DNA of 64,000 nt from positions 61,814,001-61,878,000 of the forward strand of contig NW_027361687.1 in the NCBI RefSeq assembly GCF_039654945.1, read 5' to 3'. A program made the translations under genes and the position numbers. Positions 6,789 to 57,100 of this stretch are shown here, in pieces. The DNA is from Dendrobates tinctorius. Its lineage: Eukaryota. A model generated the notes under the pieces. The model made no database searches. It had not been told where the DNA came from and saw only the letters and a program-made list of their open reading frames with translations. Positions within the stretch are counted from its first letter, which is position 1, and every line of letters starts with the position of its first letter.

Positions 6789-8406
6789 TTAAAAAGGGAA
6801 AATAAGAAAACAGCATTACACTATTAAAGGGCTTGTCTGGTTCCCATTTAAAGGTCATTTTTAAATAATAGAGTAAGTGTTCTATAGATATTGTGGTTAT
6901 CCAAGCTCCACACCCAAACTGACAAGTCATCAAATTCATCAACATCAACCAGTCATGAAACATCAGTCATCAAGAGGACAAAACCTTTAAACCGTTTGCA
7001 TGAAATAGGAAAGGGGGCTTTGTCATTGGGCTGCGTTACTGGGCATAGTCCACATTTAGTGGTGGCGCAGTTGCTGCATAGAAAATATTACTATGTTAAA
7101 GGTTGTAAGGTCCAACTTTTTTTTCCAAGTTTTGATGTTATCACCTACTCATAGGGCGCCAGAACTCAGATCCTCACCGATCACGATCGCATTTTTTTTC
7201 CCATCATTCTAGGGTTTGCATAGGCAGAAGCATTGGCAATGAATGGGTTAACCTGATAAGAGGGATCCTGTGCGACATTGTTCCTGGTGAATGGGTAATG
7301 GAAGACTTTGATTATTTCAGCGCCTTATCCGGCAGTCAGAAGCCAATTACCATATACTGGAGCCGGGAAACAGCATATCTGGGGCTTGTCGTTTTATCTA
7401 CCCATCAGTCTGACTTGAGAGCGGTGCTGAAGTCACACTGACATTTCAAAAAAGGATTGTAAAGGTTCTCAAAGCTTTTACAACGTCGCAGCGAAATAAA
7501 AAAAATCCCACGGTATCCTACATCGAGCTTCCACCAAAGCCAGAATGTGCATTATGGCTGATGCCCGAACAATGGCAACATGGCACAGGTGCACTTAAAA
7601 ATCCACAGCATATTCAATACATTCATTATCCAATAAGTGCCCATGGAGCAGATAGAGGCGATGCTTATAACGTGTGGCTCAGATGTCATATTACTACTAA
7701 CTCAAAATGATATCATGCTGCGTGTAAAAACCGTACACACGTGACATCACTTATATAAGCAATAATTAGCGCTTGTACTAGTAAGTGTGTGAATTGGGGT
7801 TTATGGTGGCTGCAGAGGTTTCCTACTCTATTTAACCCAAGATTCTCTTCTTGTAGTGCTTACTATCCCCTAGCATGTGCAACAGCTCTAAGCACTTTAC
7901 TGATGTACCTCCTGTATGCAAGAATATAACTACCATAATAGCGGCACCCACCACTGGTAACTTAAAACGGGAGCAAGCACACCATGTGAACTTGGGAAAA
8001 CCGAGATATGTGATGGCTGTTTCGCATGGAACGTGCTTCATCTGGAGCTGGAAGAAGTGTGTTTCAAGCTTAACGGCTGTCATTCATCTCTGCTTTCCCA
8101 GGTCCACATATTGTGCATGTTCCTCTCAATAAAGATGGTGTTTTAAGTTACCAGTGGTGGGTGTCGCAATTTTTCAAGCCTATCTCTTGTCAATATATAC
8201 AAACTGTTGCAGCTGAGCACCACCTCAAACTGTGTTTTTTCTGCACATTGTACAGATTCTGTTTGAACTTCCCAATTATAAGTGACATGGATATATGAGC
8301 AGTGCCAGTGTTTTATCCTTACATTTTGCATTATAACTACTATAATACCACCCCTATGTACAGGAATATAACTACTATAATACTGCACCCTATGTACAAG
8401 AATATA

Positions 8407-10000
8407 CAGTGCCTACAAGTAGTATTCAACCCCCAGCAGATTTAGCAGGTTTACACATTCGGAATTAACTTGGCATTGTGACATTTGGACTGTAGATCAG
8501 CCTGGAAGTGTGAAATGCACTGCAGCAAAAAAGAATGTTATTTCTTTGTTTAATTTTTTTTTAAATTGTGAAAAGTTTATTCAGAGGGTCATTTATTATT
8601 CAACCCCTCAAACCACCAGAATTCTGTTTGGTTCCCCTAAAGTATTAAGAAGTATTTCAGGCACAAAGAACAATGAGCTTCACATGTTTGGATTAATTAT
8701 CTCTTTTTCCAGCCTTTTCTTACTATTTAAGACCCTCCCCAAACTTGTGAACAGCACTCATACATGGTCAACATGGGAAAGACAAAGGAGCATTTCAAGG
8801 CCATCAGAGACAAGATCGTGGAGGGTCACAAGGCTGGCAAGGGGTACAAAACCCTTTCCAAGGAGTTGGGCCTACCTGTCTCCACTGTTGGGAGCATCAT
8901 CCGGAAGTGGAAGGCTTATGGAACTACTGTTAGCCTTCCACGGCCTGGACAGCCTTTGAAAGTTTCCTCCCGTGCCGAGGCCAGGCTTGTCCGAAGAGTC
9001 AAGGCTAACTCAAGGACAACAAGGAAGGAGCTCCGGGAAGATCTCATGGCAGTGGGGACATTGGTTTCAGTCAATACCATAAGTAACGTACTCCACCGCA
9101 ATGGTCTCCGTTCCAGACGAGCCCGTAAGGTACCTTTACTTTCAAAGCGTCATGTCAAGGCTCGTCTACAGTTTGCTCATGATCACTTGGAGGACTCTGA
9201 GACAGACTGGTTCAAGGTTCTCTGGTCTGATGAGACCAAGATCGAGATCTTTGGTGCCAACCACACACGTGACGTTTGGAGACTGGATGGCACTGCATAC
9301 GACCCCAAGAATACCATCCCTACAGTCAAGCATGGTGGTGGCAGCATCATGCTGTGGGGCTATTTCTCAGCCAAGGGGCCTGGCCATCTGGTCCGCATCC
9401 ATGGGAAGATGGATAGCACGGCCTACCTGGAGATTTTGGCCAAGAACCTCCGCTCCTCCATCAAGGATCTTAAGATGGGTCGTCATTTCATCTTCCAACA
9501 AGACAACGACCCAAAGCACACAGCCAAGAAAACCAAGGCCTGGTTCAAGAGGGAAAAAAATCAAGGTGTTGGAGTGGCCTAGTCAGTCTCCTGACCTTAA
9601 CCCAATTGAAAACTTGTGGAAGGAGCTCAAGATTAAAGTCCACATGAGACACCCAAAGAACCTAGATAACTTGGAGAAGATCTGCATGGAGGAGTGGGCC
9701 AAGATAACTCCAGAGACCTGTGCCGGCCTGATCATGTCTTATAAAAACGATTATTAGCTGTAATTGCAAACAAGGGTTATTCCACAAAATATTAAACCTA
9801 GGGGTTGAATAATAATTGACCCACACTTTTATGTTTAAAATTTATTAAAATTTAACTGAGCAACATAACTTTTTGGTTTGTAAGATTTATGCATCTGTTA
9901 ATAAATCCTGCTCTTGTTTGAAGTTTGAAGGCTCTAACTTATTTGCATCTTATCAAACCTGCTAAATCTGCAGGGGGTTGAATACTACTTGTAGGCACTG
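8407..10000 (+). mobile_element. Full-length Tc1/mariner DNA transposon (IR/DR type)
   Basis: TIR CAGTGCCTACAAGTAGTATTCAACCCC, 46 bp with 1 mismatch. TA TSD at 8405-8406 and 10001-10002. Inner direct repeats ttattattcaacccct at about 8593 and, inverted, at about 9800. Confidence 0.97.
8773..9795 (+). pseudogene. Tc1 DD34E transposase with two frameshifts
   Basis: MGKTKEH paired-like [25 protein letters not shown]. One extra A in the run 9554-9560 and a 1-bp loss at about 9747. The reconstructed C-terminus AVIANKGYSTKY* ends at 9795. Confidence 0.92.
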
Positions 10001-11769
10001 TAACTACTATAATACTGCCCCTATGTACAAGAATATACTATAATACTGCAATCTATGTACAAGAATATAACTACTATAATATTGCCCTCTATGTACAAGA
10101 ATATAACTACTATAATACTGCCCCTATGTACAAGAATATAACTACTATAATACTGCCCTCTATGTACAAGAATATAACTACTATAATACTGCTCCTATGT
10201 ACAAGAATATAACTACTATAATACTGCCCCTATGTACAAGAATATAACTGCTATAATACTGCCCCTATGTACAAGAATATAACTACTATAATACTGCTCC
10301 TATATACAAGAATATAACTACTATAATACTGCCCTCTATGTACAAGAATATAACTACTATAATACTGCTCTCTATGTACAAGAATATAACTACTATATAC
10401 TGCCCCCCTATGTACAAGAATATAACTACTGTAATACTGCCACTATGTACAAGAATATAACTACTATAATACTTTCCCCTATGTACAAGAATATAACTAC
10501 TATAATACTGCTCCTATGTACAAGAATATAACTACTGTAATACTGCCACTATGTACAAGAATATAACTACTATAATACTTTCCCCTATGTACAAGAATAT
10601 AACTACTATAATACTGCCCCCTATGTACAAGAATATAACTACTATAATACTGCCCCTATGTACAAGAATATAACTACTATAATACTGCCCCCATGTACAA
10701 GAATATAACTACTATAATACTGCTCCTATGCACAAGAATATAATTACTATAATACTGCCCCTGTATGCAAGAAAATAATTACTATAATACTGCTCCTATA
10801 TGCAAGAGTTGCCCCTATTGCTGTGATGAGCGTCGTCATGTTTCCTGGTTGTGTTCGGTATCTTTGTACTATGATATTTCCATACATACGCTTAGTATAA
10901 AGTATAAATTCCAACATAACCAACCACATATTTAAAATGTTATCATCTATAATTAATTCTCCAGCGCTGCGTCCCCATCACAGGCAGACAGCGGGGGTAG
11001 TAATAGGAGGCCAGGGTGACCACCTTTCTTGATTGTTAACCGCAAAAATTATTTTAACGCTTTAACCTTGTGCCCTGAACGCTCAAAAGCTAAAGCACAG
11101 AGATGTAGATGTTAGACCAAGAGCACCAAAGGTCTACCATGCCAGCGTCTCTAAGTGTATTTGCTGCTTTACCCGCAGCACACTGGCGCAGCAGCCTGTA
11201 GAGCGCAGGGTGACGGCGGGTCATTGTGGGACCACTCTTCTGCCTTGTAGACTCGCACTCATAAATGCTGAAATTGATTTCCTCTGCTCCGTTCTCTTAA
11301 ACCGTCAGCTCTCCTCACTTATCTTCCCCCTGCAAAGCAGGCGGCTTTTTCTATTTCAATAGGTCACGGAACAAAGAAGAACATAGCACCGAGCAGAACG
11401 GAGACTTCTATATGAGACTTCAAAGACAACGAGGGCGAACAGGCATATAATATTCAGGCATTTAATAAACGCCATCCTGGCCCGGAGAAGCACAAGATGT
11501 TGTGACATTAACATTTATATAAATCCTCCGCATAAACACCAGCGATTACATCAAAGAGCGTTTCCACCTAAAATGAGAAAAAAAATCCCTCACAAAATGG
11601 AAGTCCTTCAGTCGTCCTCTTCTGTCAGGTTTCTGATCTGGATCCATGTGTGGGAAAGCTTACCCAACAGCCTTATGGCCGCCATGACAGTCCCCACCCA
11701 GCTTTTCTGGATCTCTTAATGGCAAACCTGTAATACATCCTCTTAAATCATGAATGTGTGAGCTCAGTA

Positions 11770-13200
11770 GCTGCACATTTTATTGATGAAGCCAAGAGAT
11801 GTGCACTTTGCTTCACCAATGTATATATCCCAGAAGTTAGTCCAGTGGGTGCATGCACATTGCTAAGATGAAGCCAAGGGAAACCACAAAGATCAGTTTG
11901 GGAGGAGTCCAGAAGGGGTATCGATAATGCTCAGACGAAGCCAAGGGATACCACATGTCATGGTATCTGGAATTTTGGTCTGACAAGCGAAGGGTTAATG
12001 GTTAGAGCCTCTCTTTGACCTCAGGGAGGGTATCTATGGCCACAGGCGAGCAACCTTCCCTGTCGTTTATACTTCATACTTGAGTGTGTCCGACCCTGTC
12101 TTTGCTAAGTGCCTCTCGCCTGTTCCCGTGTCTATGGTGTGTATGATCTGGTCTGGTTTCTGGTTTTGTTTCTTGGCTTTCTGATTTGGTACCGTCCTGC
12201 TCGACCCGTGTTCAGACCTTTGGCTTCCCTCAACTACCCTCTCACTTTCTGATTTTGTACTGTGCAGCCCGACCCGTGCCTGACCTCCTGCTTCCCTGAC
12301 CATTCTTGTTCTGCCTGATTCTGTACCGCATTGCTCCTCCTGTGTATGACTTCTGGATTGTCTGACCATCGCTACTGTATAAACCCCTGGCTCTCTGAGC
12401 CCCCTGCCCGTCACCTCAACGTCCCTGCGATAAGCTCCGCCCCCTCTGACATCACAGGTCACGCGGTGCTAGGTCCTGCAGCCTCTGAGTGCTTCTACCA
12501 GCGCTCCGTCCCTTCCACAGGTCCTGCGACCTCCCAAACTGTGTTCCTACACAGGCCCCTCTGACAGCCCCGCGGTCTGAGTTGCTACGCTGACGCCGGG
12601 ACCGCTGACCAGTCACGCTACCCTCCTGCAGATAAGGGTAAGCGTGATACCACAAAGATGAATTTGGGAGGAGTCCAGTGAGTGCATGCGTATTGCTCAG
12701 ATGAAGCCAAGAGACACCACAAAGATGAGTTTGGGAGGAGTCCAGTGGGCACATGCGCATTGCTCAAATGAAGCCAAGAGACACCACAAAGATGAGTTTC
12801 GGAGGAGTCCAGTGGGCGCATGCGCATTGCTCAAATGAAGCCAAGAGACACCACAAAGATGAGTTTCGGAGGAGTCCAGTGGGCGCATGCGCATTGCTCA
12901 AATGAAGCCAAGAGACACCACAAAGATGAGTTTCGGAGGAGTCCAGTGGGCGCATGCGCATTGCTCAAATGAAGCCAAGAGACACCACAAAGATGAATTT
13001 TCTACATTCCAAAATGAGTCAAGTGGGCATATGCGTATTGTGTAGATGAAGCTGAGGGCAGAACATCTTGATTAATACACTGTAAAGACAAATTTGGGAT
13101 AGGTGTAAAGAGGGTGGTACGCATTGCTCAGATGAAGCAGAGGGCAGAACATCTTGCTTTACTGATTTATGCAACAGGAAAATGTGTCAGGGAGAGGAGT
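11770..13200. repeat. 67-bp minisatellite (GATGAAGCCAAGAGACACCACAAAGATGAGTTT.GGAGGAGTCCAGTGGGCGCATGCGCATTGCTCA)
   Basis: About 5 near-identical units at 12650-13000, with diverged units on both sides. Split by an LTR. Confidence 0.9.
11956..12649. mobile_element. Solo LTR (5-bp TSD) inserted in the 67-bp repeat
   Basis: Starts TGTCATG and ends CGTGATA (close to TGTCACG...CGTGACA). TSD CCACA at 11951-11955 and 12650-12654. The empty site restores gataCCACAaagatg. Confidence 0.8.
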
Positions 13201-14131
13201 CCAGTGGTGACATACACATTGTGTAGATAAGGACGTGGACAGTACATTTTGCTGCATTCCCTTTAAGGTAAGAATGCAAGGATCCTAAAGAACCAAGCAA
13301 AGGTAATAAAAGACCCAATAAAAGCAACTGTTCACTGTAGTACTGAAAAGTGATCGGTGTCACGTTCCTCCTGCTTCAGCAGGAGGCAAACAGAGGACAC
13401 CAAGCAAGATGACTACTTGAGAAATTTATCGTCACTCTTAAGTCTCAGGGGGCAGGTTGCAGGGTCAGTTTAAGAGTTTAACTGGAGTTTCCCTTTAAGA
13501 AAACAACTATATAAATTCTTAACTTCCATTTTGAGCGGCGCAGTTAACTCAAAGAGACAGTTTTCAGAAACCTTTTTTTTTCTCTTTTTCTTCTTAGCCA
13601 GGACTTAAATCCATCATCTGAAAAACAAAAAAAAAAGAAAAGAAATTATCCTTGCAAGTGACAGCTGCTAACACGCATCCTACATTGCATGCCCCTAAAT
13701 ATTTCATAACACCATATTGCGCGCAAATTAAAAGTTGCTTAATTATTTAATCCTCCTATCTTTGTTATCCTTATTTTTTATACATTTGGGGGAATTAACA
13801 TTTAATGTCATTTTTATCCGGCTCTTGCACACAATGAGCTCAAGGAGGAAACATATTGATTTTGGAGCAGGCCCCGTCGTCAAACGGATAGAACTGACCT
13901 GACCTCCCGTTTTAATCGCTTCAAAAAGTCAGCCCGCATTTACTGCCGCCTTATAACTGGGATTAATTATAACGATTAAATGTTCCAATTAGTGTTCCCT
14001 GGTAAAAGGGACTGACAACGTTACCGGAAATCTATACGGCATGGAAGTAACGGCGGGGAGGCAGAAGGAGATCTGGTGAGGAGAAAATCCCTTATGTAAT
14101 GATAGATAGATAGATAATAGATGATAGATGG

Positions 14132-15853
14132 AATGGATTGTCAAAATATTCACACCCCTTGATATTTTTCATGTTTTGCTACTCAAAACCTAGAATTTCA
14201 CTGTTTTTTTGAGGGTTTGAATCACTTCATGTACAGAACATGCCTACAACTGTGAACATTTGGTTTTCTTTTCATTGTGTAGCAAACAACAAATAGGTCA
14301 AAATAACTGAAAACCTCAGTGTGCATAACTTTTCGCCGCCCCTAAAGTCAGCTGCAAGTCGCTATGCATAAGTCTCTATGAGCTTTACATATATGGCCAC
14401 TGGGATTTTTGCCTTTTCCTCAAGGCAAAACTGCTCCATCTCCTTCAATTTAGTTGGTGTCCTCTGGTGAACGGCAATCTTCAAGTCTGACCAGAGATTC
14501 TTAATTGGATTAAAGTCTGGGCTTTGACTAGACCACTCTAAAACATTTACATGTTTCCACTTAAACCACTTGAGTGTTGCTTTAGCAGTATGCTTTGGGT
14601 CATTGTCTTGTTTGAAGGTGAACCTCCGTCCCTGTCTCAAATCACTGACCAACTGAAACAGGTTTTGCTCATGAATATTACTATATTTCGCACCATCCAT
14701 CTTTCGCTCAACTTGGAACATTTTCCCTGTCCCTGCTGCTGAAAAGCATCTGCACAGTATGATGAGGTCACCACTATGTTTCACTGTGGGAATGGTGTTC
14801 TTGGTGTGATAAGCTGTGTTGGTTTCCCACTAGACATAGCGTTCATTTTGGTGGTCAAATAGTTCAATTTTGGCCTCATCTGACATGTCTTTTGACAAAC
14901 TCAAAACAAGCCTTACAATTTTTGTGTGCAAGTAAAGGCTTTTTCTGCTCACTCTTCTATAAAGGAATGTATGGCTTATTGTAGTCGTACAGATAGATAC
15001 TCCAGTCTCTACTTGGGAACTCTGCAACTCCTCCAGGGTTACCTTTGGTCTCTGTGCTGCCTCTCTGATTAATGCCCTCCTTGCCCGGACTGACAATTTT
15101 GGTAGGTGGCCCTCTCTTGGCAGGTTTGTTGTGGTGCCATGTTCTTTCCATTTTTGATGTTGCTCTGGGGGATCATCAGAGATTGGGATATATTTTTATA
15201 ACCCAATCCTGACTTGTCCTTCTCAACAACTTTGTCCCTGACATGTTTGGAGATCTCCTTGGTCTTAATGAAGTTGTTTAGAGATCTCCTTGGTCTTCAT
15301 AGTGGTGTTTGGAGATCTGCTTCATCTTCATGGTGTTGTTTGGAGATCTCATTGGTCTTCATGGTGCTGTTTGGAGATCTCGGTCTTCATAGTGTTGTTT
15401 GGAGATCTCTTTGGTCTTCATGGTGTTGTTTGGAGATCTCTTTGGTCTCTCTGGTGTTGTTTGGAGATCTCCTTGGTCGTCCTGGTATTGTTTGGAGATC
15501 TCCTTGGTCTTCCTGGTGTTTGTTTAGTGGTGCCTTTTGTTCATTTGTTCATTGTGTTGCAGCTTCTTGGCCTTTGAGAAAAGGGTAAAGTGTATATACT
15601 GACAGACTGCACACAGGGGAGACGTCCTGTCACTAAGCATGTGACTTACGAAGGGAATTGCTTGCACCATAAATTTTTAGGGGCTTAATTGCAAAAGGGA
15701 TGAATACATATGCACATGCCAATTTTTTGTTATTTGATCACATAAATGTAATTTATGCCTATAGCTTTCTCAGTTCACCAGCTGATGCATGACAGACAAA
15801 TCGGATTACAAAAATATTTAACCACAGTTTGAGGTTGTAATGCAGCAAACCAC
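14132..15853 (-). mobile_element. Decayed Tc1 transposon (Passport-like), flanked by GATA microsatellite
   Basis: Minus-strand fragments KTKEISKHVRDKVVEK, RARRALIREAAQRPKVTLEELQ and FKQDNDPKH...SPDFNPI. TIR-like aaatattcacaccccttg at about 14144. Multiple frameshifts. The Passport resemblance is from memory. Confidence 0.85.
15243..15522 (-). repeat. 31-bp minisatellite (about 9 units) covering the Tc1 transposase start codon
   Basis: The minus-strand unit reads ATGAAGACCAAGGAGATCTCCAAACAACACC. (g/a)gagatct recurs at 15249, 15280, 15311, 15342, 15373, 15401, 15432, 15463 and 15494. Confidence 0.9.
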
Positions 15854-16018
15854 ATTAGATAGATATGGGACAGATATGAGTTAGATAGCTCATATAGAAA
15901 GAGAATGCCCGCACTCCGAAAGTAGATGTAAAAATCAAGGACTCCATCAAGCCCAGATGTCAATGATTTGATTCACAGAGCTTTTCTGAAGCCCTACATA
16001 GATACTGTAAATATAGAT

Positions 16019-16953
16019 TGTAATGCCACGGTAGCACACTTACGCAGTGATGAGGCAGTGACCCAGCAAAGTTCAAAGCAAAAGTCTCTTTAATGTGTTT
16101 ATTTCACACAATATTAATGTCCAACTCATATAAATGCATAGCATTAATGTCCAGTTCACATAAACATAGCACCCGATATTCTCCGAATCGCAGCTGGGCA
16201 CATATCCTTTGATTACAGTCACTAAACACGCTAGTCCTCCTCTGACCGGTTGCCGTGGGCGATTGCACCGCTGTGTTAATGTCTCTTTACTCGCAGCATT
16301 TCACAGTACACAGTATCCTTCAGTTTACAGTCAGTAAACAAGCTAGTCCTCCTCTGACCTGTTACCGTGGACGACTGCACCGTTGTGCAAGCTGTGGATG
16401 CCAGGCATCTCAGCTCCTCTGGCTGTTTGGCTCCGCTGGCCTGTGTTGCCTCCCACAGGTGGAGCGCTGCAGAGCCGACTGTTCTGTCCTCTTCCAAACA
16501 CCAGATTGACACTGACTCTAACCCTGACACACCCAAACCCTTTCCTGCAGGGCTTTTAACAAAGATATCTGTGGCCTGGAATGAAACCCGGGCCTAGAAT
16601 GAAACGGACTGCACAACTACCATCCTACAGTCTGTTTCACAACACAATATCTCAGAGCAGGTTTCCCTACACTAGCATGTCCAAGACTACACTTATTTTT
16701 ATTATGTCTTGTCTGCATTGCAGTCACCGATATGCCTGTTACTGCCATGCACTTCTATGGCCTTCATACACCTCCATGCACATCCTGGGGAGAACACACA
16801 GTGACCCCTACCTGTGACATCGGTCACTGCTTCACCATTGCAATCACAGCTACACCTGTGACTGCAATGCCCTCTTTTGACCTCAATATGCCTCCGTGCG
16901 CATCTTGAGCACAAACAGCGACCCCTACCTGTGGCACCGGTCACTTCCTCACA
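16019..16953. mobile_element. Solo LTR (4-bp TSD)
   Basis: TGTAATG...CCTCACA with TSD AGAT at 16015-16018 and 16954-16957. Internal duplications of about 112 bp and 121 bp. Confidence 0.8.
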
Positions 16954-19286: not shown

Positions 19287-19474
19287 CAGTGGGGAAAATA
19301 AGTATTTAGTCAGCCACTAATTGTGCAAGTTCTCCCACTTAAAAAGATGAGAGAGGCCTGTAATTGACATCATAGGTAGACCACAACTATGAGAGTATAA
19401 ATCTTGCCAAATCAGTCAAGGTGATTTTCTGGATTTGTTTTCTCATTTTGACTCTCATAGTTTGACTCTCACTG
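19287..19474. mobile_element. Small deletion derivative of a Tc1 related to 52593-54197
   Basis: CAGTGGGGAAAATAAGTATTTAGTCAG...cacttaaaaagatgaga...cataggtagacc matches one TIR of the intact element. gtgattttctggattt matches the opposite TIR. Ends CACTG|TA. Confidence 0.75.
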
Positions 19475-23394: not shown

Positions 23395-23426
23395 TAAGGT
23401 TTACTTTTTGTATAACATGTTTCATT

Positions 23427-26274: not shown

Positions 26275-26319
26275 CATTGCAAGCTTTCGAGACTGCTCAG
26301 GTCTCTTCATCAGGCATTA
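26275..26319 (-). ncRNA. Minimal type I hammerhead ribozyme motif, inverted copy
   Basis: The minus strand reads taatgc-CTGATGA-a-gagac-ctgagca-gtctc-GAAA-gctt-gcaatg. Confidence 0.68.
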
Positions 26320-45970: not shown

Positions 45971-47199
45971 TGGGGGTGAGTAAGTGTCAGTGTGAGAGCT
46001 TGTTTCTCTGAACCTTGTTCTCCTGTCTATCAAACTGCATATAGACATAACAGAGAGGCCAACTTTCAATTCAGGGCAGGAAAGTCATTGAATAATTGCA
46101 CGTACAATGCATGCTGGAAAGTAAGAGAGCGAAAGTTGCAGTCCACACCAAAGATCAAAGAGAATTGTTAAGCTCCCTTTCTGTTATGAAAATGGCGGAG
46201 CCAGGAGACAATCCCCCATTGTTAGAGAATAAAGGTAACAAAAAAAAAATGCAGCTCCACATATCCATAAAATCTTTAAACTTTATTAATCCAAATTAAA
46301 AAGCAACAACTTTATAGCAGTAATACAGGAATTTCTTGCACCTATACTGCTGGCAGAATGCTAATGAAAGGGAACTGCCTACTTTAAATATTAGGATGAC
46401 AAGTTACATAGTAGGAGAATCAAGACAGTCCTCGTACTGGTGTGTTGACCGAAAGCAGTTTTAACTTGTTATGGAGTAAGATCTGCTTTAAAGACTCACA
46501 AAAAGTCCTGATTTTTTTTCTTTTTGGACAACAGCTATTTACACACATCTCTTTTTTTTTAATCAGCTATTTAATGGGAAGGAGCATGGTAAACACTGAA
46601 GAACTTTCTCTGATGCTGTCAATGTAAATGTGATTAGATCATAGTACCGATGAGATATATACACTAGTGCAACGGAAAACAAATAAACTAGTGAGCTAAT
46701 CAATAATATCTGTATACGAGTCCATCAGGCATCTTTTAACAGCAACTTAACACTCTCTTCATCACCGGCCAGGCGGCCAATTAAAAAGTGTCAGACAAAA
46801 CTTGAAAGTATCTGTAAATGTATAAATGGACCTGCTGCTAATAAATCAGCCATCCACTAGTGATATCTCATATCCTCCAAATTTACGCTGTACTGCCTTG
46901 CCACGAGATGAAGATGCCTTGTCAGATCTCAGCAATGGCATCAAAACATCCCAGAACCTTCAAATATTCTTTGGTCCACACTGAGCCCAATTGCAACTCA
47001 TTACCCTGGAGAATTAATTAATATTCCTCATACGTCGTAAGGCCTGAACACACATTAGATTAAATTCGGCCAACTAGACGAGTCAAAATACATCTCAGAC
47101 TTCATCGACCTACATTCTCCATGAACCATAATGAATGAATAAATGGTGTGTGGACCATAATGAATGGTTATCAGATGGTCATTGATCAAAGTCAACTTT

Positions 47200-48400
47200 C
47201 ACCGAAACCGATGATCGTTCGTTGTGGTCAAAATCGGACGACGTTTATGTGTTTATGGGCAACATCACAAAAAAAATGATGAACCTCACACGTTGGGAGT
47301 TATCTAAGATAGCCTCCAAAAAGAAGATGTTGAGAAACTAATGATCAGGCACTCGGATACGTTTTTTTCTAATGTGCATGGGAAACATTACAAAAAAGTG
47401 GTGGACCTCACCAGCTGGAAACCATCTAAGGCATTCTCCCGAAAGATGATATTGGGAAAAAATATCAGTCATTTGTTATGGTCGAAATGGGACCTTTATC
47501 TAATGTGTATGGGCAACATTACAAAGAAAAAGTAGTGGACCTCAACCTTTGGGAACCATCTAAGGTGGCCTTCCCAAAGATGATGTTGGGGAAAAAAAGA
47601 TCAATCATTCGTTATGGTTGAAATCGGACAATGTTTATCTAATGTGTCATGGGCAACTTAAAAAAAAAATGTGCTGGACCTCACCAGTCAGGAATTGTCT
47701 AAGATAGACTCTTGAAAAATGATTTTCGCGAAAAAAAGATAAGGCATTCATTATGGTCAAAATCTGACGAAGTTTATCTTATGTGTATGAGCAACATTAC
47801 AGGAAAAAGTGGACCTCACCCATAGGGAACCATCTAAGGTAGCCACCTAAAAATGTTGTGGAAGGAAAGATCAGGAGTTCATTATGGTCAAAATCAGATG
47901 ATGTTTATCTAATGTGTATTGGCAACATTACAGAAAAAATGGACCTTGGCAGTTAGGAACCATCTAAGGTAGCTTCCCGAAAGATGATGTTGGGAAAAAA
48001 AGATTAGGCATTCATTATGGTCAAAACTGACCTATAGTTATGTAATGTGTATGGGCAACATTTCAATTGGAAAGCATCTAACATGGCTTCCCAAATGATG
48101 TTTGGGAAAGAAAAATTAGGTGTTAATTATTATCGAAATCGGACATTTATGTAAGCTGAACAGGCAACATTTCAAAAAAAGTGGTGAACCTCACCTGTTG
48201 GGAACCATCTAAGTTAGTCTCCCAAAAGATGATGTTGGGTGGAAGGGGGGGAGATCAGGCATTCCTTATTGTCAAAATCGGATCACATTTATGTCATATG
48301 TATGGACAACATTATAGGAAAAAGTGAAATTCACCCATAGGGAATCATCTGAGGTGGTCTCCCAAAAGATGATGCTGGGGAAGGAAAGATCAGACATGTT
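47200..48400. repeat. ~135-bp tandem repeat (about 9 units), probably expanded inside a MITE
   Basis: gcaacat-like motif at 47259, 47382, 47513, 47653, 47791, 47922, 48055, 48164 and 48306. Each unit carries ggaaccatctaagg and ttatggtcaaaatc-like motifs. Confidence 0.85.
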
Positions 48401-50139
48401 GAGATAAATCGTCCAATGTTTTTGTCACTCTCCGAGGCGTGTCTGGCAAAGACTTGCCCACTTTTCCTATTGAAAAGTCATTCACTATCGGCTGAGTGTT
48501 CATGTGTATGGGGGAATTAGGAGTGAGAACTGTTGTTAAGATGGTCACCATCTAAGGGTTCAGAAAGCTGATGCCTCTGAAGGATGTCAAATTTCTTCTT
48601 CCCTGACTTGATTAGATGAATACCGTTTATCGGCCGGCTTTTGTTCTCTATTTACAGACGCGTTGAGTCTATATGTGGGGAACCAAAATGTTAGGTGAAC
48701 ATGGTCTAAAAATCGTTTGAAAAAGTTAGCACCTCACACGAAACCTTTCCCAAGTGTACAATCTTCGAATAGCTTGTTGTTAGAATAATTTACATCCTCT
48801 CTGCCAATGTCATTCTTATCGGATCTTCTGCCTTTTCGTCTGACATCTGCTAACCACATTCAAGGCTTTTTTCACAGACATGACAGGTTGAAAATGCAAA
48901 ACAAAAGATTAATTTCAGACAGAAAAGGAAAATTACGGATTTTGTTGAATATGAGAAAGCGTTAAGGAGGAAAAAGACTGTGCTAAAAATATATATATTT
49001 GCAGTGGCTTGTACATGGAGACAGGCAGTTTTCCTTGGTCCTAGGTGAATTTCTTGCTGTGGGCGACCAATTCGTGTAGGGAAGATAAAAGGCCAGTTGT
49101 GTCCTCTGTTGACTGCAGAAGTAGCGGCTTTTAATCACAGTCCCCGTGTTCAGAATGACCTTGTCGGAGCTCACTACATACCATACAATCTGGGTCTATT
49201 GTTGGCTGAGTGCGTCAGGTTCAGACTTATTTGATGCGGGGCCCGTATACCAAGCAGCGACGCTTTTCTCTTGGCAAAAACATGTTTCAAATGGAAATAA
49301 AGGATGAGTCGCTGGCTGGGAAGAAAGGAACACCGGATCACAGGTTATACTCGTAAAGAAAGCTAGTTTTAATAAGACCCATTTATTGGTTTGGAAAAAT
49401 GGCAAGATAAATATTTGCAAGATGAGTGGTCCTTGTCAACTGGGGTGACAATTTTTCCCATCAAGGACTCTGGTCCATCGGCCAGATCAGAAGTCTCTGG
49501 CCATCGGACAGAAGGATTTCGAAAATCTTACCTTCCATACAGATGATGTCACACCAGATAAAAAGCCTTGCTGGGGATCCTGAAAGGTAAAAGATTCAGA
49601 GTTCCCATCCATGAGTCCAAAAGCACTGACCTGGCTGATGGACCAGAGTCCTTCGAATCGATCCACTCATTTCTACTGATTTACTTTTTCTCCATTCATG
49701 TCAATGTGATGGAAAAGTCAACCATTATGGAAAAACTCAATGCAATTCAATATTTTATTAGCATTTTTCAAGGTTTAAAAGGATAATTCCCATCTGCATA
49801 GATGGATATAGTGCAATAAAAATAAGCATTTTTGGCATTTAATGCTTGTCAAAATTCTTAGTCGTTTTTGAGAAATGAACACTTTTCTTTTTGTTTCCAA
49901 CTCGTTGCCTAGGAGCACGACCACTACTGCTGCCTAGCAGGTAAGCACTATGCTGCACCCGACCAGGATTAACATGTAACCGTGTGCTCTAGTATTCCTG
50001 TTCATTTAAAAAAAAAACTAATAAGCTCAACAGAAAAGAGTTTGTAAACACAGAGCATATACTGTCTAGCAGTGTTGGTCGGTCTCCATGGCAATGAGCT
50101 GTAAACAAAAGAAAAGTCTTAATATATTAAGAAGGGGTG

Positions 50140-51167
50140 AAAGAGCCAAAGAGTGGTCGTAAATGGCTGCACATCCAGTTGGAAGAATGTCTCAAGTGGG
50201 GTACCACAGGGCTCTGTCCTGGGCCCTGTATTGTTCAACATCTTTATCAACGATTTAGATGAAGGAATTGAGGGTAAACTGATTAAATTTGCTGATGACA
50301 CAAAGCTAGGAGGGATAGCTAATACTAGAGAAGAGAGAGAGAGGATTCAAAAAGATTTAAATAAACTGGAGAAGTGGGCAGCAACTAACAGAATGGTTTT
50401 TAACAGGGAGAAATGCAAAGTACTACATCTGGGCAATAAAAATGGAAAAAGCATATATAGAATGGGAGGAATAGGGCTGAGTGACAGCACATGTGAAAAA
50501 GACTTGGGTATACTAATAGATCACAGACTGAATATGAGTCAACAGTGTGATGCAGCAGCAAAAAAGGCAAATGCAATTCTAGGATGTATTAACAGAAGCA
50601 TACAGTCTAGATCACGTGAAGTCATTATTGCCCTCTACTCCTCTTTGGTCAGACCTCATCTGGAATATTGTGTCCAGTTTTGGGCACCACATTTTAAAAA
50701 AGACATCAAAAAACTGGAGCAAGTTCAGAAAAGAGCGACCAGAATGGTGACCGGTCTGCAAACCCTGTCTTATGAGGAAAGGTTGCAGGATTTGGGAATG
50801 TTTAGTTTGCAAAAGAGAAGACTGAGAGGAAACTTAATAGCTGTCTACAAATATCTAAAGGGCTGTCACATTGTAGAAGGATCAACTTTATTCTCATTTG
50901 CACAAGGAAAGACTAGAAGCAATGGGATGAAACTGAATGGGAGGAGACACAGATTAGATATTAGAAAAAACTTTTTGACAGTTAGAGTGATCAATGAGTG
51001 GAACAGGCTGCCACGAGAAGTGGTGAGTTCTCCTTCAATGGAAGTCTTCAAACAGAGGCTGGACAGACATCTGGCTGGATTGATTTAGCGAATCCTGCAT
51101 TGAGCAGGGGGTTGGACCAGATGGCCCAGGAGGTCCCTTCCAACTCTACGATTCTATGATTCTATGA
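50140..51167 (+). mobile_element. CR1 LINE, 5'-truncated
   Basis: CR1 3' end ggtcccttccaac...(ATTCTATG)2 and an RT-domain ORF. Confidence 0.95.
50153..51088 (+). CDS. CR1 ORF2 reverse transcriptase, C-terminal part (open frame, no native start)
   Basis: [45 protein letters not shown]. Confidence 0.9.
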   Translation: MVVNGCTSSWKNVSSGVPQGSVLGPVLFNIFINDLDEGIEGKLIKFADDTKLGGIANTREERERIQKDLNKLEKWAATNRMVFNREKCKVLHLGNKNGKSIYRMGGIGLSDSTCEKDLGILIDHRLNMSQQCDAAAKKANAILGCINRSIQSRSREVIIALYSSLVRPHLEYCVQFWAPHFKKDIKKLEQVQKRATRMVTGLQTLSYEERLQDLGMFSLQKRRLRGNLIAVYKYLKGCHIVEGSTLFSFAQGKTRSNGMKLNGRRHRLDIRKNFLTVRVINEWNRLPREVVSSPSMEVFKQRLDRHLAGLI

Positions 51168-52592
51168 AAATTTTAATAAGCAGTAAATTATAAAATGGCT
51201 TGTATTTACACGCACAATCCAACTATTTCCTTTTCAGAAGATGGGAATAACCCTTTAAAACCATGATGGAAAATTTAATACCGCAGCAGGTGAACACACC
51301 GTAAAAAAATCACAGAATCAAAATTCTACAGGTTGTCTCAGCCAGTTTCCAAGAGAATCCAGAATCCATTTGAAATGTCGGAAATTTTATAGATTGAGAT
51401 GTGATTTAAAAAATGTTTCCTACGGATCTAGAGTAATGGTGGAGCAAGAGGAGGAAGCGAGACGCGTCAGTCATAGATGAGCGCAGCTTGCTGGAACTTA
51501 ATCTCTTTGCAAATCACAGGCTGCCAACCTTTCATTTCCCAAGTGGAAAATTAACAATAATTTGCACTTATTGCTGCCTTTACATGCAATAATTAAATGC
51601 AACCTGCGAAGACGTCACAGGACGTAATTATGTATTATGCAGGTGCTCGCCTATAGGGTTAAATATAGTGGGCAGATACCGGGAGGGAATCAGCCACAGA
51701 ATCCACTTCTTCCTCAGAGTAACCTTGCCTGACTTCCTCTCTTGGTATAATAAATGTGCTTTCTGATGCCTGGGAAAGATACAAAAGGCACATTTTCTGG
51801 TGTAATTGGGACAACTTTACACCAGCCCAGCGGCACATTTTATTAAGGACGAAATGTCAGACTCCGCACACTGTTCTCAGCACAAGTTATGCGCTGCCCT
51901 TGCTCGCTCGCTGGATGCCATAATTGCAATATTTTCTTGTATTCACTAGTCTGAGAGCGGCATCTCTCCGGTGATGAAAGAGAAAAACAAGGAGCCCTCC
52001 GTATTCCTCACACTTTAACCCCTTCTCTGTGCCGCCAATGCGTTTCACACGGGGACAATTATGTCTAAAATTATAGCGAATCTGCTGTTCCTTCAGTACA
52101 GTCTTGTACATAGTAAGCAGTATTATAGTAGTTATATTCTTGTACATAGGGGCAGTATTATAGTAGTTATATTCTTGTACATAGGAGCAGTATTATAGTA
52201 GTTATATTCTTGTACATAGGAGCAGTATTATAGTAGTTATATTCTTGTATATAGGAGGCAGTATTATAGTAGTTATATTCTTGTACTTATGAGCAGTATT
52301 ATCAGAATTATATTCTTGTACATAGGAGCAGTATTATAGTAGTTATATTCTTGTACATAGGGGCAGAATTATAGTAGTTATATTCTTGTACATAGGAGCA
52401 GTATTATAGTAGTTATATTCTTGTACATAGGGGCAGTATTATTGTAGTTATATTCTTGTACATAGGGGCAGTATTATAGTAGTTATATTCTTGTATATAG
52501 GGGGCAGTATTATAGTAGTCATATTCTTGTACATACGGAGCAGTATTATAGTAGTTATATTCTTGTACATAGGAGCAGTATTATAGTAGTTA

Positions 52593-54197
52593 CAGTGGGG
52601 CAAAAAAGTATTTAGTCAGTCAGCAATAGTGCAAGTTCCACCACTTAAAAAGATGAGAGGCGTCTGTAATTTACATCATAGGTAGACCTCAACTATGGGA
52701 GACAAACTGAGAAAAAAAAATCCAGAAAATCACAGTGTCTGTTTTTTTTTCATTTTATTTGCATATTATGGTGGAAAATAAGTATTTGGTCAGAAACAAA
52801 ATTTCATCTCAATACTTTGTGATATATCCTTTGTTGGCAATGACAGAGGTTAAACGTTTTCTGTAAGTCTTCACAAGGTTGCCACACACTGTTGTTGGTA
52901 TGTTGGCCCATTCCTCCATGCAGATCTCCTCTAGAGCAGTGATGCTTTTGGCTTTTCGCTTGGCAACACGGACTTTCAACTCCCTCCAAAGGTTTTCTAT
53001 AGGGTTGAGATCTGTAGACTGGCTAGGCCACTCCAGGACCTTGAAATGCTTCTTACGAAGCCACTCCTCCGTTGCCCTGGCGGTGTGCTTTGGATCATTG
53101 TCATGTTGAAAGACCCAGCCACTTTTCATATTCAATGCCCTTGCTGATGGAAGGAGGTTTGCACTCAAAATCTCACGATACATGGCCCCATTCATTCTTT
53201 CATGTACCTGGATCAGTCGTCCTGGCCCCTTTGCAGAGAAACAGCCCCAAAGCATGATGTTTCCACCACCATGCTTTACTGTAGGTATGGTGTTTGATGG
53301 ATGCAACTCAGTATTCTTTTTCCTCCAAACACGACAAGTTGTGTTTCTACCAAACAGTTCCAGTTTGGTTTCATCAGACCATAGGACATTCTCCCAAAAC
53401 TCCTCTGGATCATCCAAATGCTCTCTAGCAAACTTCAGACGGGCCCGGACATGTACAGGCTTAAGCAGTGGGACACGTCTGGCACTGCAGGATCTGAGTC
53501 CATGGTGGCGTAGTGTGTTACTTATGGTAGGCCTTGTTACATTGGTCCCAGCTCTCTGCAGTTCATTCACTAGGTCCCCCCGCGTGGTTCTGGGATTTTT
53601 GCTCACCGTTCTTGTGATCATTCTGACCCCACGGGGTGGGATTTTGCGTGGAGCACCAGATCGAGGGAGATTATCAGTGGTCTTGTATGTCTTCCATTTT
53701 CTAATTATTGCTCCCACAGTTGATTTCTTCACTCCAAGCTGGTTGGCTATTGCAGATTCAGTCTTCCCAGCCTGGTGCAGGGCTACAATTTTGTTTCTGG
53801 TGTCCTTTGACAGCTCTTTGGTCTTCACCATAGTGGAGTTTGGAGTCAGACTGTTTGAGGGTGTGCACAGGTGTCTTTTTATACTGATAACAAGTTTAAA
53901 CAGGTGCCATTACTACAGGTAATGAGTGGAGGAAAGAGGAGACTCTTAAAGAAGAAGTTACAGGTCTGTGAGAGCCAGAAATCTTGATTGCTTGTTTCTG
54001 ACCAAATACTTATTTTCCACCATAATATGCAAATAAAATGAAAAAAAACAGACAATGTGATTTTCTGGATTTTTTTTTCTCAGTTTGTCTCCCATAGTTG
54101 AGGTCTACCTATGATGTAAATTACAGACGCCTCTCATCTTTTTAAGTGGTGGAACTTGCACTATTGCTGACTGACTAAATACTTTTTTGCCCCACTG
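52593..54197 (-). mobile_element. Full-length Tc1 transposon with ~207-bp IR/DR TIRs
   Basis: TIR CAGTGGGGCAAAAAAGTATTTAGTCAG at 52593-52799 and about 53992-54197, almost identical. TA TSD at 52591-52592 and 54198-54199. Confidence 0.98.
52809..53831 (-). CDS. Tc1 DD34E transposase, intact 340-aa ORF
   Basis: Paired-like [18 protein letters not shown] and STDLNPIE, with 34 residues between the second D and E. C-terminus [11 protein letters not shown]. Confidence 0.96.
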
Positions 54198-57100
54198 TAT
54201 ATTCTTGTACATGGGGGCAGTATTATAGTAGTTATATTCTTGTACATAGGGGCAGTATTATAGTAGTTATATTCTTGTACATAGGAGCAGTATTATAGTA
54301 GTTATATTCTTGTATATAGGAGGCAGTATTATAGTAGTTATATTCTTGTACATAGGAGCAGTATTATAGTAGTTATATTCTTGTACATAGGGGGCAGTAT
54401 TATAGTAGTTATATTCTTGTACATAGGGGACAGTATTATAGTAGTTATATTCTTGTACATAGGGGTAGTATTATAGTAGTTGTATTCTTGTACATAGGAG
54501 GCAGTATTATAGTAGTTATATTCTTGTACATAGGGGCAGTATTATAGTAGTTATAGTCTTGTACATAGGGGCAGTATTATAGTAGTTATATTCTTGTACA
54601 TAGGGGCAGTATTATAATAGTTATATTCTTGTACATAGGGGCAGTATTATAGTAGTTATAGTCTTGTACATAGGGGCAGTATTATAGTAGTTATATTCTT
54701 GTACATAGGAGCAGTATTATAATAGTTATATTCTTGTACATAGGAGCAGTATTATAATAGTTATATTCTTGTACATAGGGGCAGTATTATAGTAGTTATA
54801 GTCTTGTACATAGGGGCAGTATTATAGTAGTTATATTCTTGTACATAGGGGTAGTATTATAGTAGTTATATTCTTGTACATAGGGGGCAGTATTACAGTA
54901 GTTATATCCTTGTACATAGGGGCAGTATTATAGTAGTTATATTCTTGTACATAGGAGCAGTATTATAATAGTTATATTCTTGTACATAGGAGCAGTATTA
55001 TAATAGTTATATTCTTGTACATAGGGGCAGTATTATAGTAGTTATAGTCTTGTACATAGGGGCAGTATTATAGTAGTTATATTATTGTACATAGGGGTAG
55101 TATTATAGTAGTTATATTCTTGTACATAGGGGGCAGTATTACAGTAGTTATATCCTTGTACATAGGGGCAGTATTATAGCAGTTATATTCTTGTACATAG
55201 GGGGCTGTATTATAGTAGTTATATTCTTGTACATAGGGGTAGTATTATAGTAGTTGTATTCTTGTACATAGGAGGCAGTATTATAGTAGTTATATTCTTG
55301 TACATAGGACCAGTATTATAGTAGTTATAGTCTTGTACATAGGGGCAGTATTATAGTAGTTATATTCTTGTACATAGGAGCAGTATTATAATAGTTATAT
55401 TCTTGTACATAGGGGCAGTATTATAGTAGTTATAGTCTTGTACATAGGGGCAGTATTATAGTAGTTATATTCTTGTACATAGGGGCAGTATTATAATAGT
55501 TATATTCTTGTACATAGGGGCAGTATTATAGTAGTTATAGTCTTGTACATAGGGGCAGTATTATAGTAGTTATATTCTTGTACATAGGAGCAGTATTATA
55601 ATAGTTATATTCTTGTACATAGGAGCAGTATTATAATAGTTATATTCTTGTACATAGGGGCAGTATTATAGTAGTTATAGTCTTGTACATAGGGGCAGTA
55701 TTATAGTAGTTATATTCTTGTACATAGGGGTAGTATTATAGTAGTTATATTCTTGTACATAGGGGCAGTATTATAGTAGTTATATTCTTATACATAGGGG
55801 GCAGTATTACAGTAGTTATATCCTTGTACATAGGGGCAGTATTATAGTAGTTATATTCTTGTACATAGGGGCAGTATTACAGTAGTTATATTCTTGTATA
55901 TAGGAGCAGTATTATAGTAGTTATATTCTTGTATATAGGAGCAGTATTGCAGTAGTTATATTCTTGTACATAGGAGCAGTATTATAGTAGCTATATTCTT
56001 GTATATAGGAGCAGTATTACAGTAGTTATATTCTTGTACATAGGAGCAGTATTATAATAGTTATATTCTTGTACATAGGGGCAGTATTATAGTAGTTATA
56101 TTCTTGTACATAGGGGTAGTATTATAGTAGTTATATTCTTGTACATAGGGGGCAGTATTACAGTAGTTATATTCTTGTACATAGGGGCAGTGTTATAGTA
56201 GTTATATTCTTGTACATAGGAGCAGTATTATAGTAGCTATATTCTTGTACATAGGGGTAGTATTATAGTAGTTACATTCTTGTACATAGGAGCAGTATTA
56301 TAGTAGCTATATTCTTGTACATAGGGGTAGTATTATAGTAGTTATATTCTTGTACATAGGGAGCAGTATTATAGTAGTTATATTCTTGTACATAGGGGCA
56401 GTGTTATAGTAGTTATATTCTTGTACATAGGAGCAGTATTATAGTAGATATATTCTTGTACATAGGAGGCAGTATTATAGTAGTTATATTCTTGTACATA
56501 GGGGACAGTATTATAGTAGTTATATTCTTGTACATAGGGGCAGTATTATAGTAGTTATAGTCTTGTACATAGGGGCAGTATTATAGTAGTTATATTCTTG
56601 TACATAGGGGCAGTATTATAATAGTTATATTCTTGTACATAGGGGCAGTATTATAGTAGTTATAGTCTTGTACATAGGGGCAGTATTATAGTAGTTATAT
56701 TCTTGTACATAGGAGCAGTATTATAATAGTTATATTCTTGTACATAGGAGCAGTATTATAATAGTTATATTCTTGTACATAGGGGCAGTATTATAGTAGT
56801 TATAGTCTTGTACATAGGGGCAGTATTATAGTAGTTATATTCTTGTACATAGGGGTAGTATTATAGTAGTTATATTCTTGTACATAGGGGGCAGTATTAC
56901 AGTAGTTATATCCTTGTACATAGGGGCAGTATTATAGTAGTTATATTCTTGTACATAGGAGCAGTATTATAATAGTTATATTCTTGTACATAGGAGCAGT
57001 ATTATAATAGTTATATTCTTGTACATAGGGGCAGTATTATAGTAGTTATAGTCTTGTACATAGGGGCAGTATTATAGTAGTTATATTATTGTACATAGGG

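What the first reader, a model, noticed from the sequence alone, without database searches (positions are those of the whole stretch)
8330..54199. Two different Tc1 families inserted at the same TA, in the same orientation, of one 35-bp satellite
Seen: removing the Tc1 at 8407-10000 restores GTACAAGAATA-TA-ACTACTATAA. Removing the Tc1 at 52593-54197 restores the exact reverse complement. The monomer has 8 TA dinucleotides and both elements use the one at positions 15-16. Both transposase genes also run in the same direction relative to the monomer. The elements differ in TIRs and protein sequence, so these are independent insertions, and they are the only two young Tc1 copies in the window. 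Known: Tc1/mariner elements need TA and prefer AT-rich, deformable flanks, but are not regarded as satellite-specific. Inference: the satellite may act as a landing pad or safe harbour, or as a sink that captures Tc1 elements. Caveat: n=2, chance of same TA and orientation is about 1/16, and the array is very TA-dense.
Basis: partly seen in the sequence, partly recalled or inferred. Interest (0 to 1): 0.85.

Follow-up and report, generated by a model that had tools for sequence, protein, structure and literature searches.

The report
Two Tc1 transposons, one satellite TA
Two unrelated Tc1 cut-and-paste transposons do sit at the same TA of a 35-bp frog satellite, but the satellite holds a third of the window's preferred Tc1 target sites and that TA is one of the two best fits to the usual Tc1 target motif, so this looks like ordinary target choice and not a special landing pad.

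Summary
E1 (8407-10000) and E2 (52593-54197) are different Tc1 families. Both carry TA duplications at the same TA of the 35-bp monomer, in the same orientation relative to it. E2 has an intact 340-aa gene; E1 has two frameshifts.

A landing pad is not needed to explain this.
- **Target share:** the satellite is 9.9% of the window but holds 29% of its TAs and 33% of its ANNTANNT sites.
- **Which TA:** ANNTANNT is the majority-rule Sleeping Beauty target. The TA used is the only one of the eight that fits it.
- **Relatives:** fish copies of both families (89-91% nucleotide identity) show A at -3 or T at +3 in 20 of 22 half-sites (P=1.5e-7).
- **Chance of the same TA:** 0.33-0.97 across my target models, not 1/8. 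Orientation adds 1/2.
- **Abundance:** read depth suggests about 10^4 E1 copies and about 6x10^5 monomers, so roughly 100 or more such insertions are expected per genome.

One caveat: fuller position models rank a second TA (ATG-TA-CAA) above the one used.

A precedent exists: the Mboumar mariner in ant satellite showed no intrinsic preference in vitro.

First-reader notes on other pieces of this genome (s1-369629, s1-376914) describe Tc1 insertions or footprints at one TA of a minisatellite. I could not check them.

Verdict: ordinary, low interest.

The parts
8332..8406 (+). Satellite array A, the two monomers left of E1. The last two bases (8405-8406) are the left TA of the target duplication.
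   Evidence: (period 35, 90% matches).
8407..10000 (+). E1, a Tc1-like element of 1594 bp. Inverted repeats lie at 8407-8452 and 9955-10000.
   Evidence: 46-bp repeats, 97.8% identity. (family word depth of about 10,000 against a single-copy depth of 2.7).
8773..9792 (+). E1 transposase gene, broken by two 1-bp frameshifts (extra A near 9554, missing A near 9742).
   Evidence: HTH_SB, HTH_Tnp_Tc3_2 and DDE_3 in the pieces. (both indels are shared by about half of the family depth).
10001..10807 (+). Satellite array A, right part. 10001-10002 is the right TA of the duplication.
   Evidence: (22.9 copies, 90% matches).
52102..52592 (-). Satellite array B, the part left of E2, with monomers in reverse orientation. 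52591-52592 is one TA of the duplication.
   Evidence: (13.9 copies, 92% matches).
52593..54197 (-). E2, a Tc1-like element of 1605 bp. Inverted repeats lie at 52593-52799 and 53992-54197.
   Evidence: 207 bp, 99% identity. (89-91% identical over its full length to fish copies).
52809..53831 (-). E2 transposase gene, an intact 340-aa reading frame.
   Evidence: (gap-free alignment to the SB100X catalytic domain 5cr4, E=2.8e-80). (D153, D244, E279, H187, P247, K248).
54198..58876 (-). Satellite array B, main part (132.9 monomers). 54198-54199 is the other TA of the duplication. It contains a 100% identical duplication of about 1.9 kb at a shift of 2004 bp.

Best explanation
Two ordinary, independent cut-and-paste insertions by two Sleeping-Beauty-type (DD34E) Tc1 families landed in a very abundant, TA-dense satellite.

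The transposase captures a TA in bendable DNA of the form A-Y-R-TA-Y-R-T, with A at -3 and T at +3 the strongest positions. Each 35-bp monomer offers one TA that meets both strong positions. That is the TA used, whose left half ATA-TA is a perfect half-site. One further TA is good by other measures.

The satellite therefore collects Tc1 elements in proportion to its target content and concentrates them on one or two TAs. The shared orientation is a 1-in-2 coincidence.

- **Shown here:** the anatomy, the target counts, the motif in relatives, and the rough abundances.
- **Inferred:** that these two families follow the Sleeping Beauty rule in this frog, and the genome-wide expectation.
For: **1. 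Target share.** The satellite is 9.9% of the pre-insertion window. It holds 1354 of 4648 TAs (29%) and 149 of 447 ANNTANNT sites (33%).

**2. Literature on the motif.**
- SB100X prefers ATATATAT. Its majority-rule target is ANNTANNT, with -3 A and +3 T the most conserved positions. Residues H187, P247 and K248 tune this choice (PMC8934666).

**3. Same residues in E1 and E2.** Both align without gaps to Sleeping Beauty numbering. Both keep D153, H187, D244, P247 and K248, and E2 also shows E279.

**4. Fit of the site.** Of the 8 TAs in the monomer, only the one used fits ANNTANNT (context printed).

**5. Flanks of relatives with retrievable DNA.** These are E2-like copies in a catfish and three unnamed assemblies, and E1-like copies in Prochilodus.
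- 20 of 22 half-sites have A at -3 or T at +3, against a background of 0.36 (P=1.5e-7).
- 7 of 9 full sites fit ANNTANNT, against a background of 0.147 (P=4e-5).

**6. Other E1 copies in frogs.** 12 contigs of run X5 and 10 of run X9 match from 8402, that is ATATA followed by the element end. Further out they continue as an AT repeat.

**7. Chance of the same TA.** Across 13 model variants it is 0.33-0.97.

**8. Abundance.**
- Single-copy depth is 2.7.
- E1 consensus words have depth about 10,000, and 20,000-60,000 when summed.
- Satellite depth is about 1.7 million in all four organisms.
- This suggests roughly 10^4 E1 copies and 6x10^5 monomers, and so on the order of 100 or more E1 copies expected in the satellite.

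**9. Density null.** I used Dendrobates tinctorius figures as a proxy: Tc1 is 6.57% of about 6.35 Gb (PMC11152451). The null then predicts about 1.1 Tc1 in this window's satellite and about 2.2 outside it. Observed: 2 and 2.

**10. Precedent (PMC2581405).** Five Mboumar mariners sit at one TA of a MITE in ant satellite. In an in vitro hop assay 9 of 45 insertions fell in the satellite, against 0.19-0.26 expected.
Against: - **A second TA ranks higher in fuller models.** Models using -3 to -1 or -6 to -1 rank TA no. 2 (ATG-TA-CAA) above the one used. The reason is that +1 A and +2 C were never seen in the 22 half-sites of close relatives. Under those models the probability of the used TA is 0.01-0.35, and both insertions there has a probability of about 0.0001-0.12.
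- **Small, non-frog sample.** The sample is 22-32 half-sites, none of them from this frog.
- **No direct genome-wide count.** No tabulation of flanks in this genome was possible.
- **Rough copy numbers.** They come from summed contig word depth, which the tool itself says is not a copy number.
- **Proxy genome figures.** The species is not known, so genome size and Tc1 content are borrowed from other dendrobatids.
Confidence: 0.8

Rival explanations
1. The satellite is a real insertion hotspot. Something beyond the local motif draws Tc1 transpososomes to this TA: the periodic bend of the array, its nucleosome phasing, or a heterochromatin protein.
For: - Both elements chose the TA that fuller motif models rank second, not first.
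- The two sampled words of the 60-bp E1-satellite junction are held by runs of at least six organisms, including very small runs. This fits a multi-copy junction.
- First-reader notes s1-369629 and s1-376914 describe Tc1 events at one TA of a minisatellite elsewhere in this genome (unchecked).
Against: - n=2.
- The observed density equals the target-proportional expectation.
- The multi-copy junction is also what the null predicts.
- Which two words were sampled is unknown, and words with five or fewer flank bases occur in any E1 copy.
- The one tested precedent, Mboumar, showed no intrinsic preference.
Confidence: 0.08
2. Retention bias (a safe harbour by selection). Insertions land anywhere, but in satellite they are neutral, are excised less, or are lost less by deletion, so young copies pile up there.
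For: - Both young copies lie in satellite, while the two copies outside it are old and degraded.
- None of about 165 monomers shows a length variant of the kind an excision footprint would leave at that TA.
Against: - In a genome of about 6 Gb that is mostly repeats, most insertions are neutral anyway.
- It does not explain the same TA or the same orientation.
- Four elements cannot show an age difference.
Confidence: 0.08
3. A strand-specific trap. The arrays are transcribed in one direction like a uni-strand piRNA cluster, and insertions in one orientation are favoured because they yield antisense small RNAs.
For: Only the shared orientation of the two elements relative to the monomer.
Against: - A coincidence of 1 in 2.
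- In relatives the poorer half-site lies on the 5' side (L043, L047), while in the window it lies on the 3' side. So no orientation rule is visible.
Confidence: 0.03
4. Assembly artefact. Tc1 copies were mis-joined into collapsed satellite.
For: Array B contains a 100% identical duplication of about 1.9 kb, which could be an assembly effect.
Against: - Both elements have exact TA duplications that restore a perfect monomer.
- A contig of the source sample runs without a difference from unique DNA into the array (6763-8361).
- The E1 junction words exist in many independent runs.
Confidence: 0.01

Closest known systems
Target-site preference of Sleeping Beauty, ZB and Bari (Tc1 family, DD34E)
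   Same: - TA duplication.
- Preference for an AT-rich palindromic ATATATAT / ANNTANNT target.
- E1 and E2 share the 340-aa layout, the catalytic residues and the target-tuning residues H187, P247 and K248 with Sleeping Beauty.
- Their relatives show the same -3 A / +3 T rule.
   Different: - The preference of E1 and E2 themselves was not measured.
- The site used has only one perfect half (ATA-TA). The other half (ACT) keeps only the +3 T.
Mboumar mariner in the satellite DNA of Messor ants (PMC2581405)
   Same: - A Tc1/mariner element found repeatedly in satellite DNA.
- Five copies lie at the same TA of a repeat unit.
- The hotspot idea was proposed there too.
   Different: - It is a mariner (DD34D), one family, in an insect.
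- Here two Tc1 families sit in a frog satellite.
- In ants the assay found no intrinsic preference (0.20 observed against 0.19-0.26 expected).
Truly repeat-specific elements: R1/R2 in rDNA, TRAS/SART in telomeric repeats, the piggyBac-like Pokey in Daphnia rDNA (named from my own knowledge)
   Same: Mobile elements that live at one position of a tandem repeat.
   Different: - In those families most or all copies sit in the repeat, through a sequence-specific nuclease or a strict target.
- E1 has thousands of copies, and its flanks elsewhere are AT repeats and unrelated DNA.
Fish-to-frog horizontal transfer of Mariner/Tc1 in poison frogs (PMC6278860)
   Same: - E2 is 89-91% identical over its full length to fish copies, and E1 is 89-90% identical to Prochilodus copies.
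- Both families are high-copy and young in the frog.
   Different: This bears on where the families came from, not on target choice.

Membership tests
Tc1 family (DD34E) of the Tc1/mariner superfamily | TA target-site duplication | tested here: met
   TA lies on both sides of E1 and of E2. Removing the element plus one TA restores the monomer.
Tc1 family (DD34E) of the Tc1/mariner superfamily | Terminal inverted repeats beginning with CAGTG | tested here: met
   E1 has 46-bp repeats at 97.8% identity. E2 has 207-bp repeats at 99% identity.
Tc1 family (DD34E) of the Tc1/mariner superfamily | Transposase with a paired-like helix-turn-helix part and a DDE_3 catalytic domain | tested here: met
   HTH_SB, HTH_Tnp_Tc3_2 and DDE_3 score above the Pfam cut-offs in E2 and in the E1 pieces. 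E2 matches the SB100X catalytic domain 5cr4 with E=2.8e-80.
Tc1 family (DD34E) of the Tc1/mariner superfamily | Catalytic triad D, D, 34 residues, E | tested here: met
   E2 has D153, D244 and E279. E1 has D153 and D244 in the first piece, and the NPIENLW stretch with the E in the piece after the frameshift.
Autonomous (potentially active) element | Uninterrupted transposase reading frame | tested here: met
   Met for E2 only, with 340 aa. Not met for E1, which has two frameshifts. Activity itself was not tested.
Repeat-specific (site-specific) transposon | Most copies of the family lie in the repeat that is the target | tested here: not met
   - E1 word depth implies thousands of copies.
- The listed flanks of other copies are AT repeats, not the satellite.
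- All 12 distinct relatives in fish and metagenome contigs lie in unrelated DNA.
- A full census in this genome was not possible.
Repeat-specific (site-specific) transposon | Insertions in the repeat exceed its share of available target sites | tested here: inconclusive
   In the window there are 2 young elements, and the satellite holds 33% of preferred sites. The density matches a target-proportional null built on proxy genome figures. No genome-wide count could be made.

The most novel reading that the evidence does not exclude
The 35-bp satellite is a true Tc1 trap. Many Tc1 families insert at this one TA and in one orientation far more often than the local motif predicts. The cause would be array structure, heterochromatin tethering, or strand-specific selection like that on a piRNA cluster. 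The arrays would then act as a genome-wide sink for newly invading (horizontally transferred) Tc1 families.
Probability: 0.06. Interest if true: 0.6.

Novelty: already known. Interest (0 to 1): 0.15.

Why it matters
If the satellite were a real landing pad, it would be a natural safe-harbour target for Sleeping-Beauty-type vectors. It would also be a mechanism by which giant frog genomes absorb invading transposons.

The evidence instead points to the textbook behaviour of Tc1 elements: a TA within an A..TA..T context, met by a TA-dense and very abundant satellite.

The useful outcome is a worked null model for this genome:
- One preferred site per monomer.
- About a third of the local targets lie in satellite.
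- A chance of the same TA of 0.3-0.97, not 1/8.

Similar notes from the scan can be judged against this null.

Tried and rejected
**Fetching frog DNA around relatives.**
- The exact E2 protein is not on record.

**Scans of public collections.**
- Scans of viral contigs for both inverted-repeat ends and both proteins found nothing.
- A metagenome scan for the satellite found nothing.
- A metagenome scan for E2 relatives gave 36 loci. Only a handful had usable ends, and several had palindromic flanks that look like assembly artefacts, so I left those out.

**Excision footprints.**
- None of about 165 monomers has a 3-5 bp insertion at that TA.
- The joints with G or T between 8406 and 10004 are plain monomer variants.

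**The arrays as part of one dispersed element.** Rejected, because the flanks of arrays A and B share nothing.

**Reads.**
- It gave depths and some flanks but did not list junction-spanning contigs, so the junction copy number stays unknown.
- The junction run search sampled only 2 words, which is too few to be decisive.

**Motif models.** The full position-weight model from 22 half-sites is overfitted and contradicts the simple ANNTANNT reading about which TA is best. I report both.

**Other points.**
- Notes of the scan give titles only and could not be checked.
Full report
**What is there**

The window holds two arrays of a 35-bp satellite (monomer starting GTACAAGAATATAAC).
- Array A is on the + strand, at 8332-8406 and 10001-10807.
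- Array B is in reverse orientation, at 52102-52592 and 54198-58876.
- Monomer matches are 90-92%.

Each array is interrupted once.
- E1 (8407-10000) is 1594 bp, with 46-bp inverted repeats that differ at one base.
- E2 (52593-54197) is 1605 bp, with 207-bp inverted repeats at 99% identity.
- Both start CAGTG and end CACTG, and both are flanked by TA on each side.
- Taking out the element and one TA gives AGAATA-TA-ACTACT for E1 and the exact reverse complement for E2.
- So the same TA of the monomer was used, at positions 12-13 in my phase.
- The E1 gene lies on + in the + array and the E2 gene on - in the - array, so the orientation relative to the monomer is the same.

The two elements are different families.
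- They share 67% nucleotide identity over 739 bp of the catalytic core and nothing elsewhere.
- Protein identity is 44-54%.
- The flanks of the two arrays share nothing, so these are two separate loci and two independent events.

**What the elements are**

E2 encodes an intact 340-aa protein.
- It carries HTH_SB, HTH_Tnp_Tc3_2 and DDE_3 domains.
- It aligns without a gap to the SB100X catalytic domain (5cr4, E=2.8e-80).
- It has D153, D244 and E279, a DD34E triad.

E1 has the same layout, but two 1-bp frameshifts in A-runs.
- In the reads of the source sample, each frameshift is carried by about half of the family's word depth: 12,622 of 28,360 and 9,796 of 19,697.
- So they are real, and E1 belongs to a frameshifted subfamily that was itself amplified.

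The nearest proteins point to a dendrobatid frog.
- For E2 they are Ranitomeya imitator gene models at 95-98% identity.
- For E1 the best hit is a 343-aa protein from a read assembly at 98%; Ranitomeya imitator gene models also match, at 83% and 93%.

Both families have copies in fish that are 89-91% identical in DNA over the whole element.
- For E2 these are in Hemibagrus guttatus and three unnamed assemblies.
- For E1 they are in Prochilodus magdalenae.
- This fits the fish-frog horizontal transfer of Mariner/Tc1 already reported for poison frogs (PMC6278860).

**Is the coincidence more than chance? Step 1: being in the satellite**

- After removing the two elements, the satellite is 9.9% of the window.
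- It holds 1354 of 4648 TAs (29%).
- It holds 149 of 447 sites of the form A..TA..T (33%).
- Two insertions both falling in it has a probability of about 0.09-0.11.

**Step 2: the same TA**

The literature sets the expectation.
- SB100X prefers ATATATAT centred on the TA. Its majority-rule target is ANNTANNT. The A at -3 and the T at +3 are the most conserved positions.
- H187, P247 and K248 of the transposase tune this choice (PMC8934666).
- ZB, SB and Bari share the motif (PMC7913693).

E1 and E2 keep H187, P247 and K248. Among the eight TAs of the monomer, only the one used has both A at -3 and T at +3 (contexts). Its left half, ATA-TA, is a perfect half-site.

I tested the rule on relatives whose DNA I could fetch.
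- There were seven distinct E2-like copies and three E1-like copies in fish genomes, plus three one-sided ends in metagenome contigs.
- 20 of 22 half-sites have the expected base, against a background of 0.36 in the same loci (P=1.5e-7).
- 7 of 9 full sites fit ANNTANNT, against a background of 0.147 (P=4e-5).

The frog reads agree. In runs X5 and X9, 12 and 10 contigs carrying the E1 end match the window back to 8402 (ATATA plus the element). They then continue as an AT repeat.

**A caveat on step 2**

- Models that also weigh -2/-1 and +1/+2 give an A-Y-R-TA-Y-R-T consensus.
- They rank the TA in ATG-TA-CAA first and the one used second.
- The reason is that A at +1 and C at +2 were never seen among the 22 half-sites of close relatives.
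- Adding five sites of other Tc1-like families, where such bases do occur, brings the used TA to 0.2-0.35.
- Across all 13 variants the probability that two insertions share a TA is 0.33-0.97, always far above 1/8.
- The probability that this TA is the one used ranges from 0.01 to 0.73.
- So the motif explains why two elements coincide, but with this small sample it does not firmly predict which of the two good TAs is used.

**Step 3: orientation**

- The target preference is palindromic and both ends of an element carry the same repeat, so 1/2 is expected.
- In the window the poorer half-site lies at the 3' end of both elements.
- In the two relatives with one poor half (L043, L047) it lies at the 5' end.
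- No orientation rule shows.

Together, given two insertions in the satellite, the same TA and the same orientation has a probability of about 0.17-0.48, not 1/16. Including step 1 it is about 0.02-0.05 per window. The scan has already read more than 500 windows of this genome.

**Genome-wide expectation**

From:
- A contig of the source sample covers 6763-8361 without a difference at depth 2.7, which I take as the single-copy depth.
- E1 consensus contigs have depth 9,800-10,016 (about 3,700 copies). Summed depth per bin is 20,000-60,000.
- The satellite bin 10022-10110 sums to 1.7 million, about 6x10^5 monomers or some 20 Mb.
- Three other organisms show similar values.
- The tool warns that summed depth is not a copy number, so these are orders of magnitude only.

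With one preferred site per monomer, and about 3.5x10^7 such sites elsewhere in a 6.35-Gb genome, the satellite would hold 1-3% of preferred sites. It would therefore hold on the order of 100 or more E1 copies.

For all Tc1 elements I used Dendrobates tinctorius as a proxy (Tc1 6.57% of the assembly, PMC11152451).
- The null gives about 0.0075 elements per preferred site.
- That is 1.1 expected in this window's satellite and 2.2 outside it.
- I see 2 and 2.

The 60-bp E1 junction (8377-8436) gave only two sampled words. Both are held by runs of at least six organisms, some very small. This fits a multi-copy junction, as the null predicts. It is not decisive, because I cannot tell whether the sampled words reach far enough into the satellite.

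**Comparison with what is known**

The closest case is Mboumar, a mariner found in the satellite DNA of Messor ants.
- Five copies lie at the same TA of a MITE.
- 9 of 45 insertions fell in a 7-monomer array, against 0.19-0.26 expected. Only 1 of 53 hit the favoured TA.
- They concluded there is no intrinsic preference (PMC2581405).

E1 and E2 pass every test for membership of the DD34E Tc1 family. They fail the main test for a repeat-specific element, since their copies and their relatives lie in all kinds of DNA.

**Verdict**

- The satellite is a passive sink because it is dense in good Tc1 targets.
- Nothing here calls for a landing pad.
- A real hotspot, retention bias or a strand-specific trap cannot be excluded with n=2, and together they get about 0.2.
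- Two first-reader notes on other pieces of this genome (s1-369629, s1-376914) report Tc1 insertions or footprints at one TA of a minisatellite. I saw only their titles and could not test them.
- A genome-wide flank census would settle the matter.

Noticed in passing
window 52593-54197 and 8407-10000; loci L037, L039-L048: Both Tc1 families have fish copies that are 89-91% identical in DNA over the whole element, non-coding parts included. E2 matches Hemibagrus guttatus and three unnamed assemblies. E1 matches Prochilodus magdalenae. This fits the fish-frog horizontal transfer already reported for poison frogs (PMC6278860).
   Followed up: partly
window 9554 and 9742: The two frameshifts of E1 are each shared by about half of the family's word depth in reads of two to four organisms. 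So a frameshifted, non-autonomous E1 subfamily was amplified to thousands of copies, presumably moved by intact relatives such as P0121 (343 aa, 98% identical).
   Followed up: partly
window 54500-58450: Array B contains a 100% identical duplication of about 1.9 kb at a shift of 2004 bp (about 57 monomers). It is either a very recent duplication within the array or an assembly effect.
   Followed up: partly
window 14350-15530: A third, old Tc1 copy lies on the - strand, 38-40% identical in protein to E1 and E2. Its start-codon region is expanded into a 31-bp minisatellite (15244-15525, 9 copies).
   Followed up: partly
window 7908-8331: A stray satellite monomer (7908-7940) is separated from array A by about 390 bp. 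That stretch includes a MITE-like unit with inverted ends of about 24 bp (about 7947-8170). It may be another, non-Tc1 insertion at the edge of the array.
   Followed up: no
window 19287-19462: A scrap of an E2-like inverted repeat (84-87% identical), preceded by TG where TA is expected. It is an old, degraded copy or a MITE remnant.
   Followed up: no
window 10001-10110: The 35-bp satellite has a summed word depth of 1.7-2.7 million in runs of four different organisms. It is therefore a major satellite, tens of Mb, shared across related frog species.
   Followed up: partly
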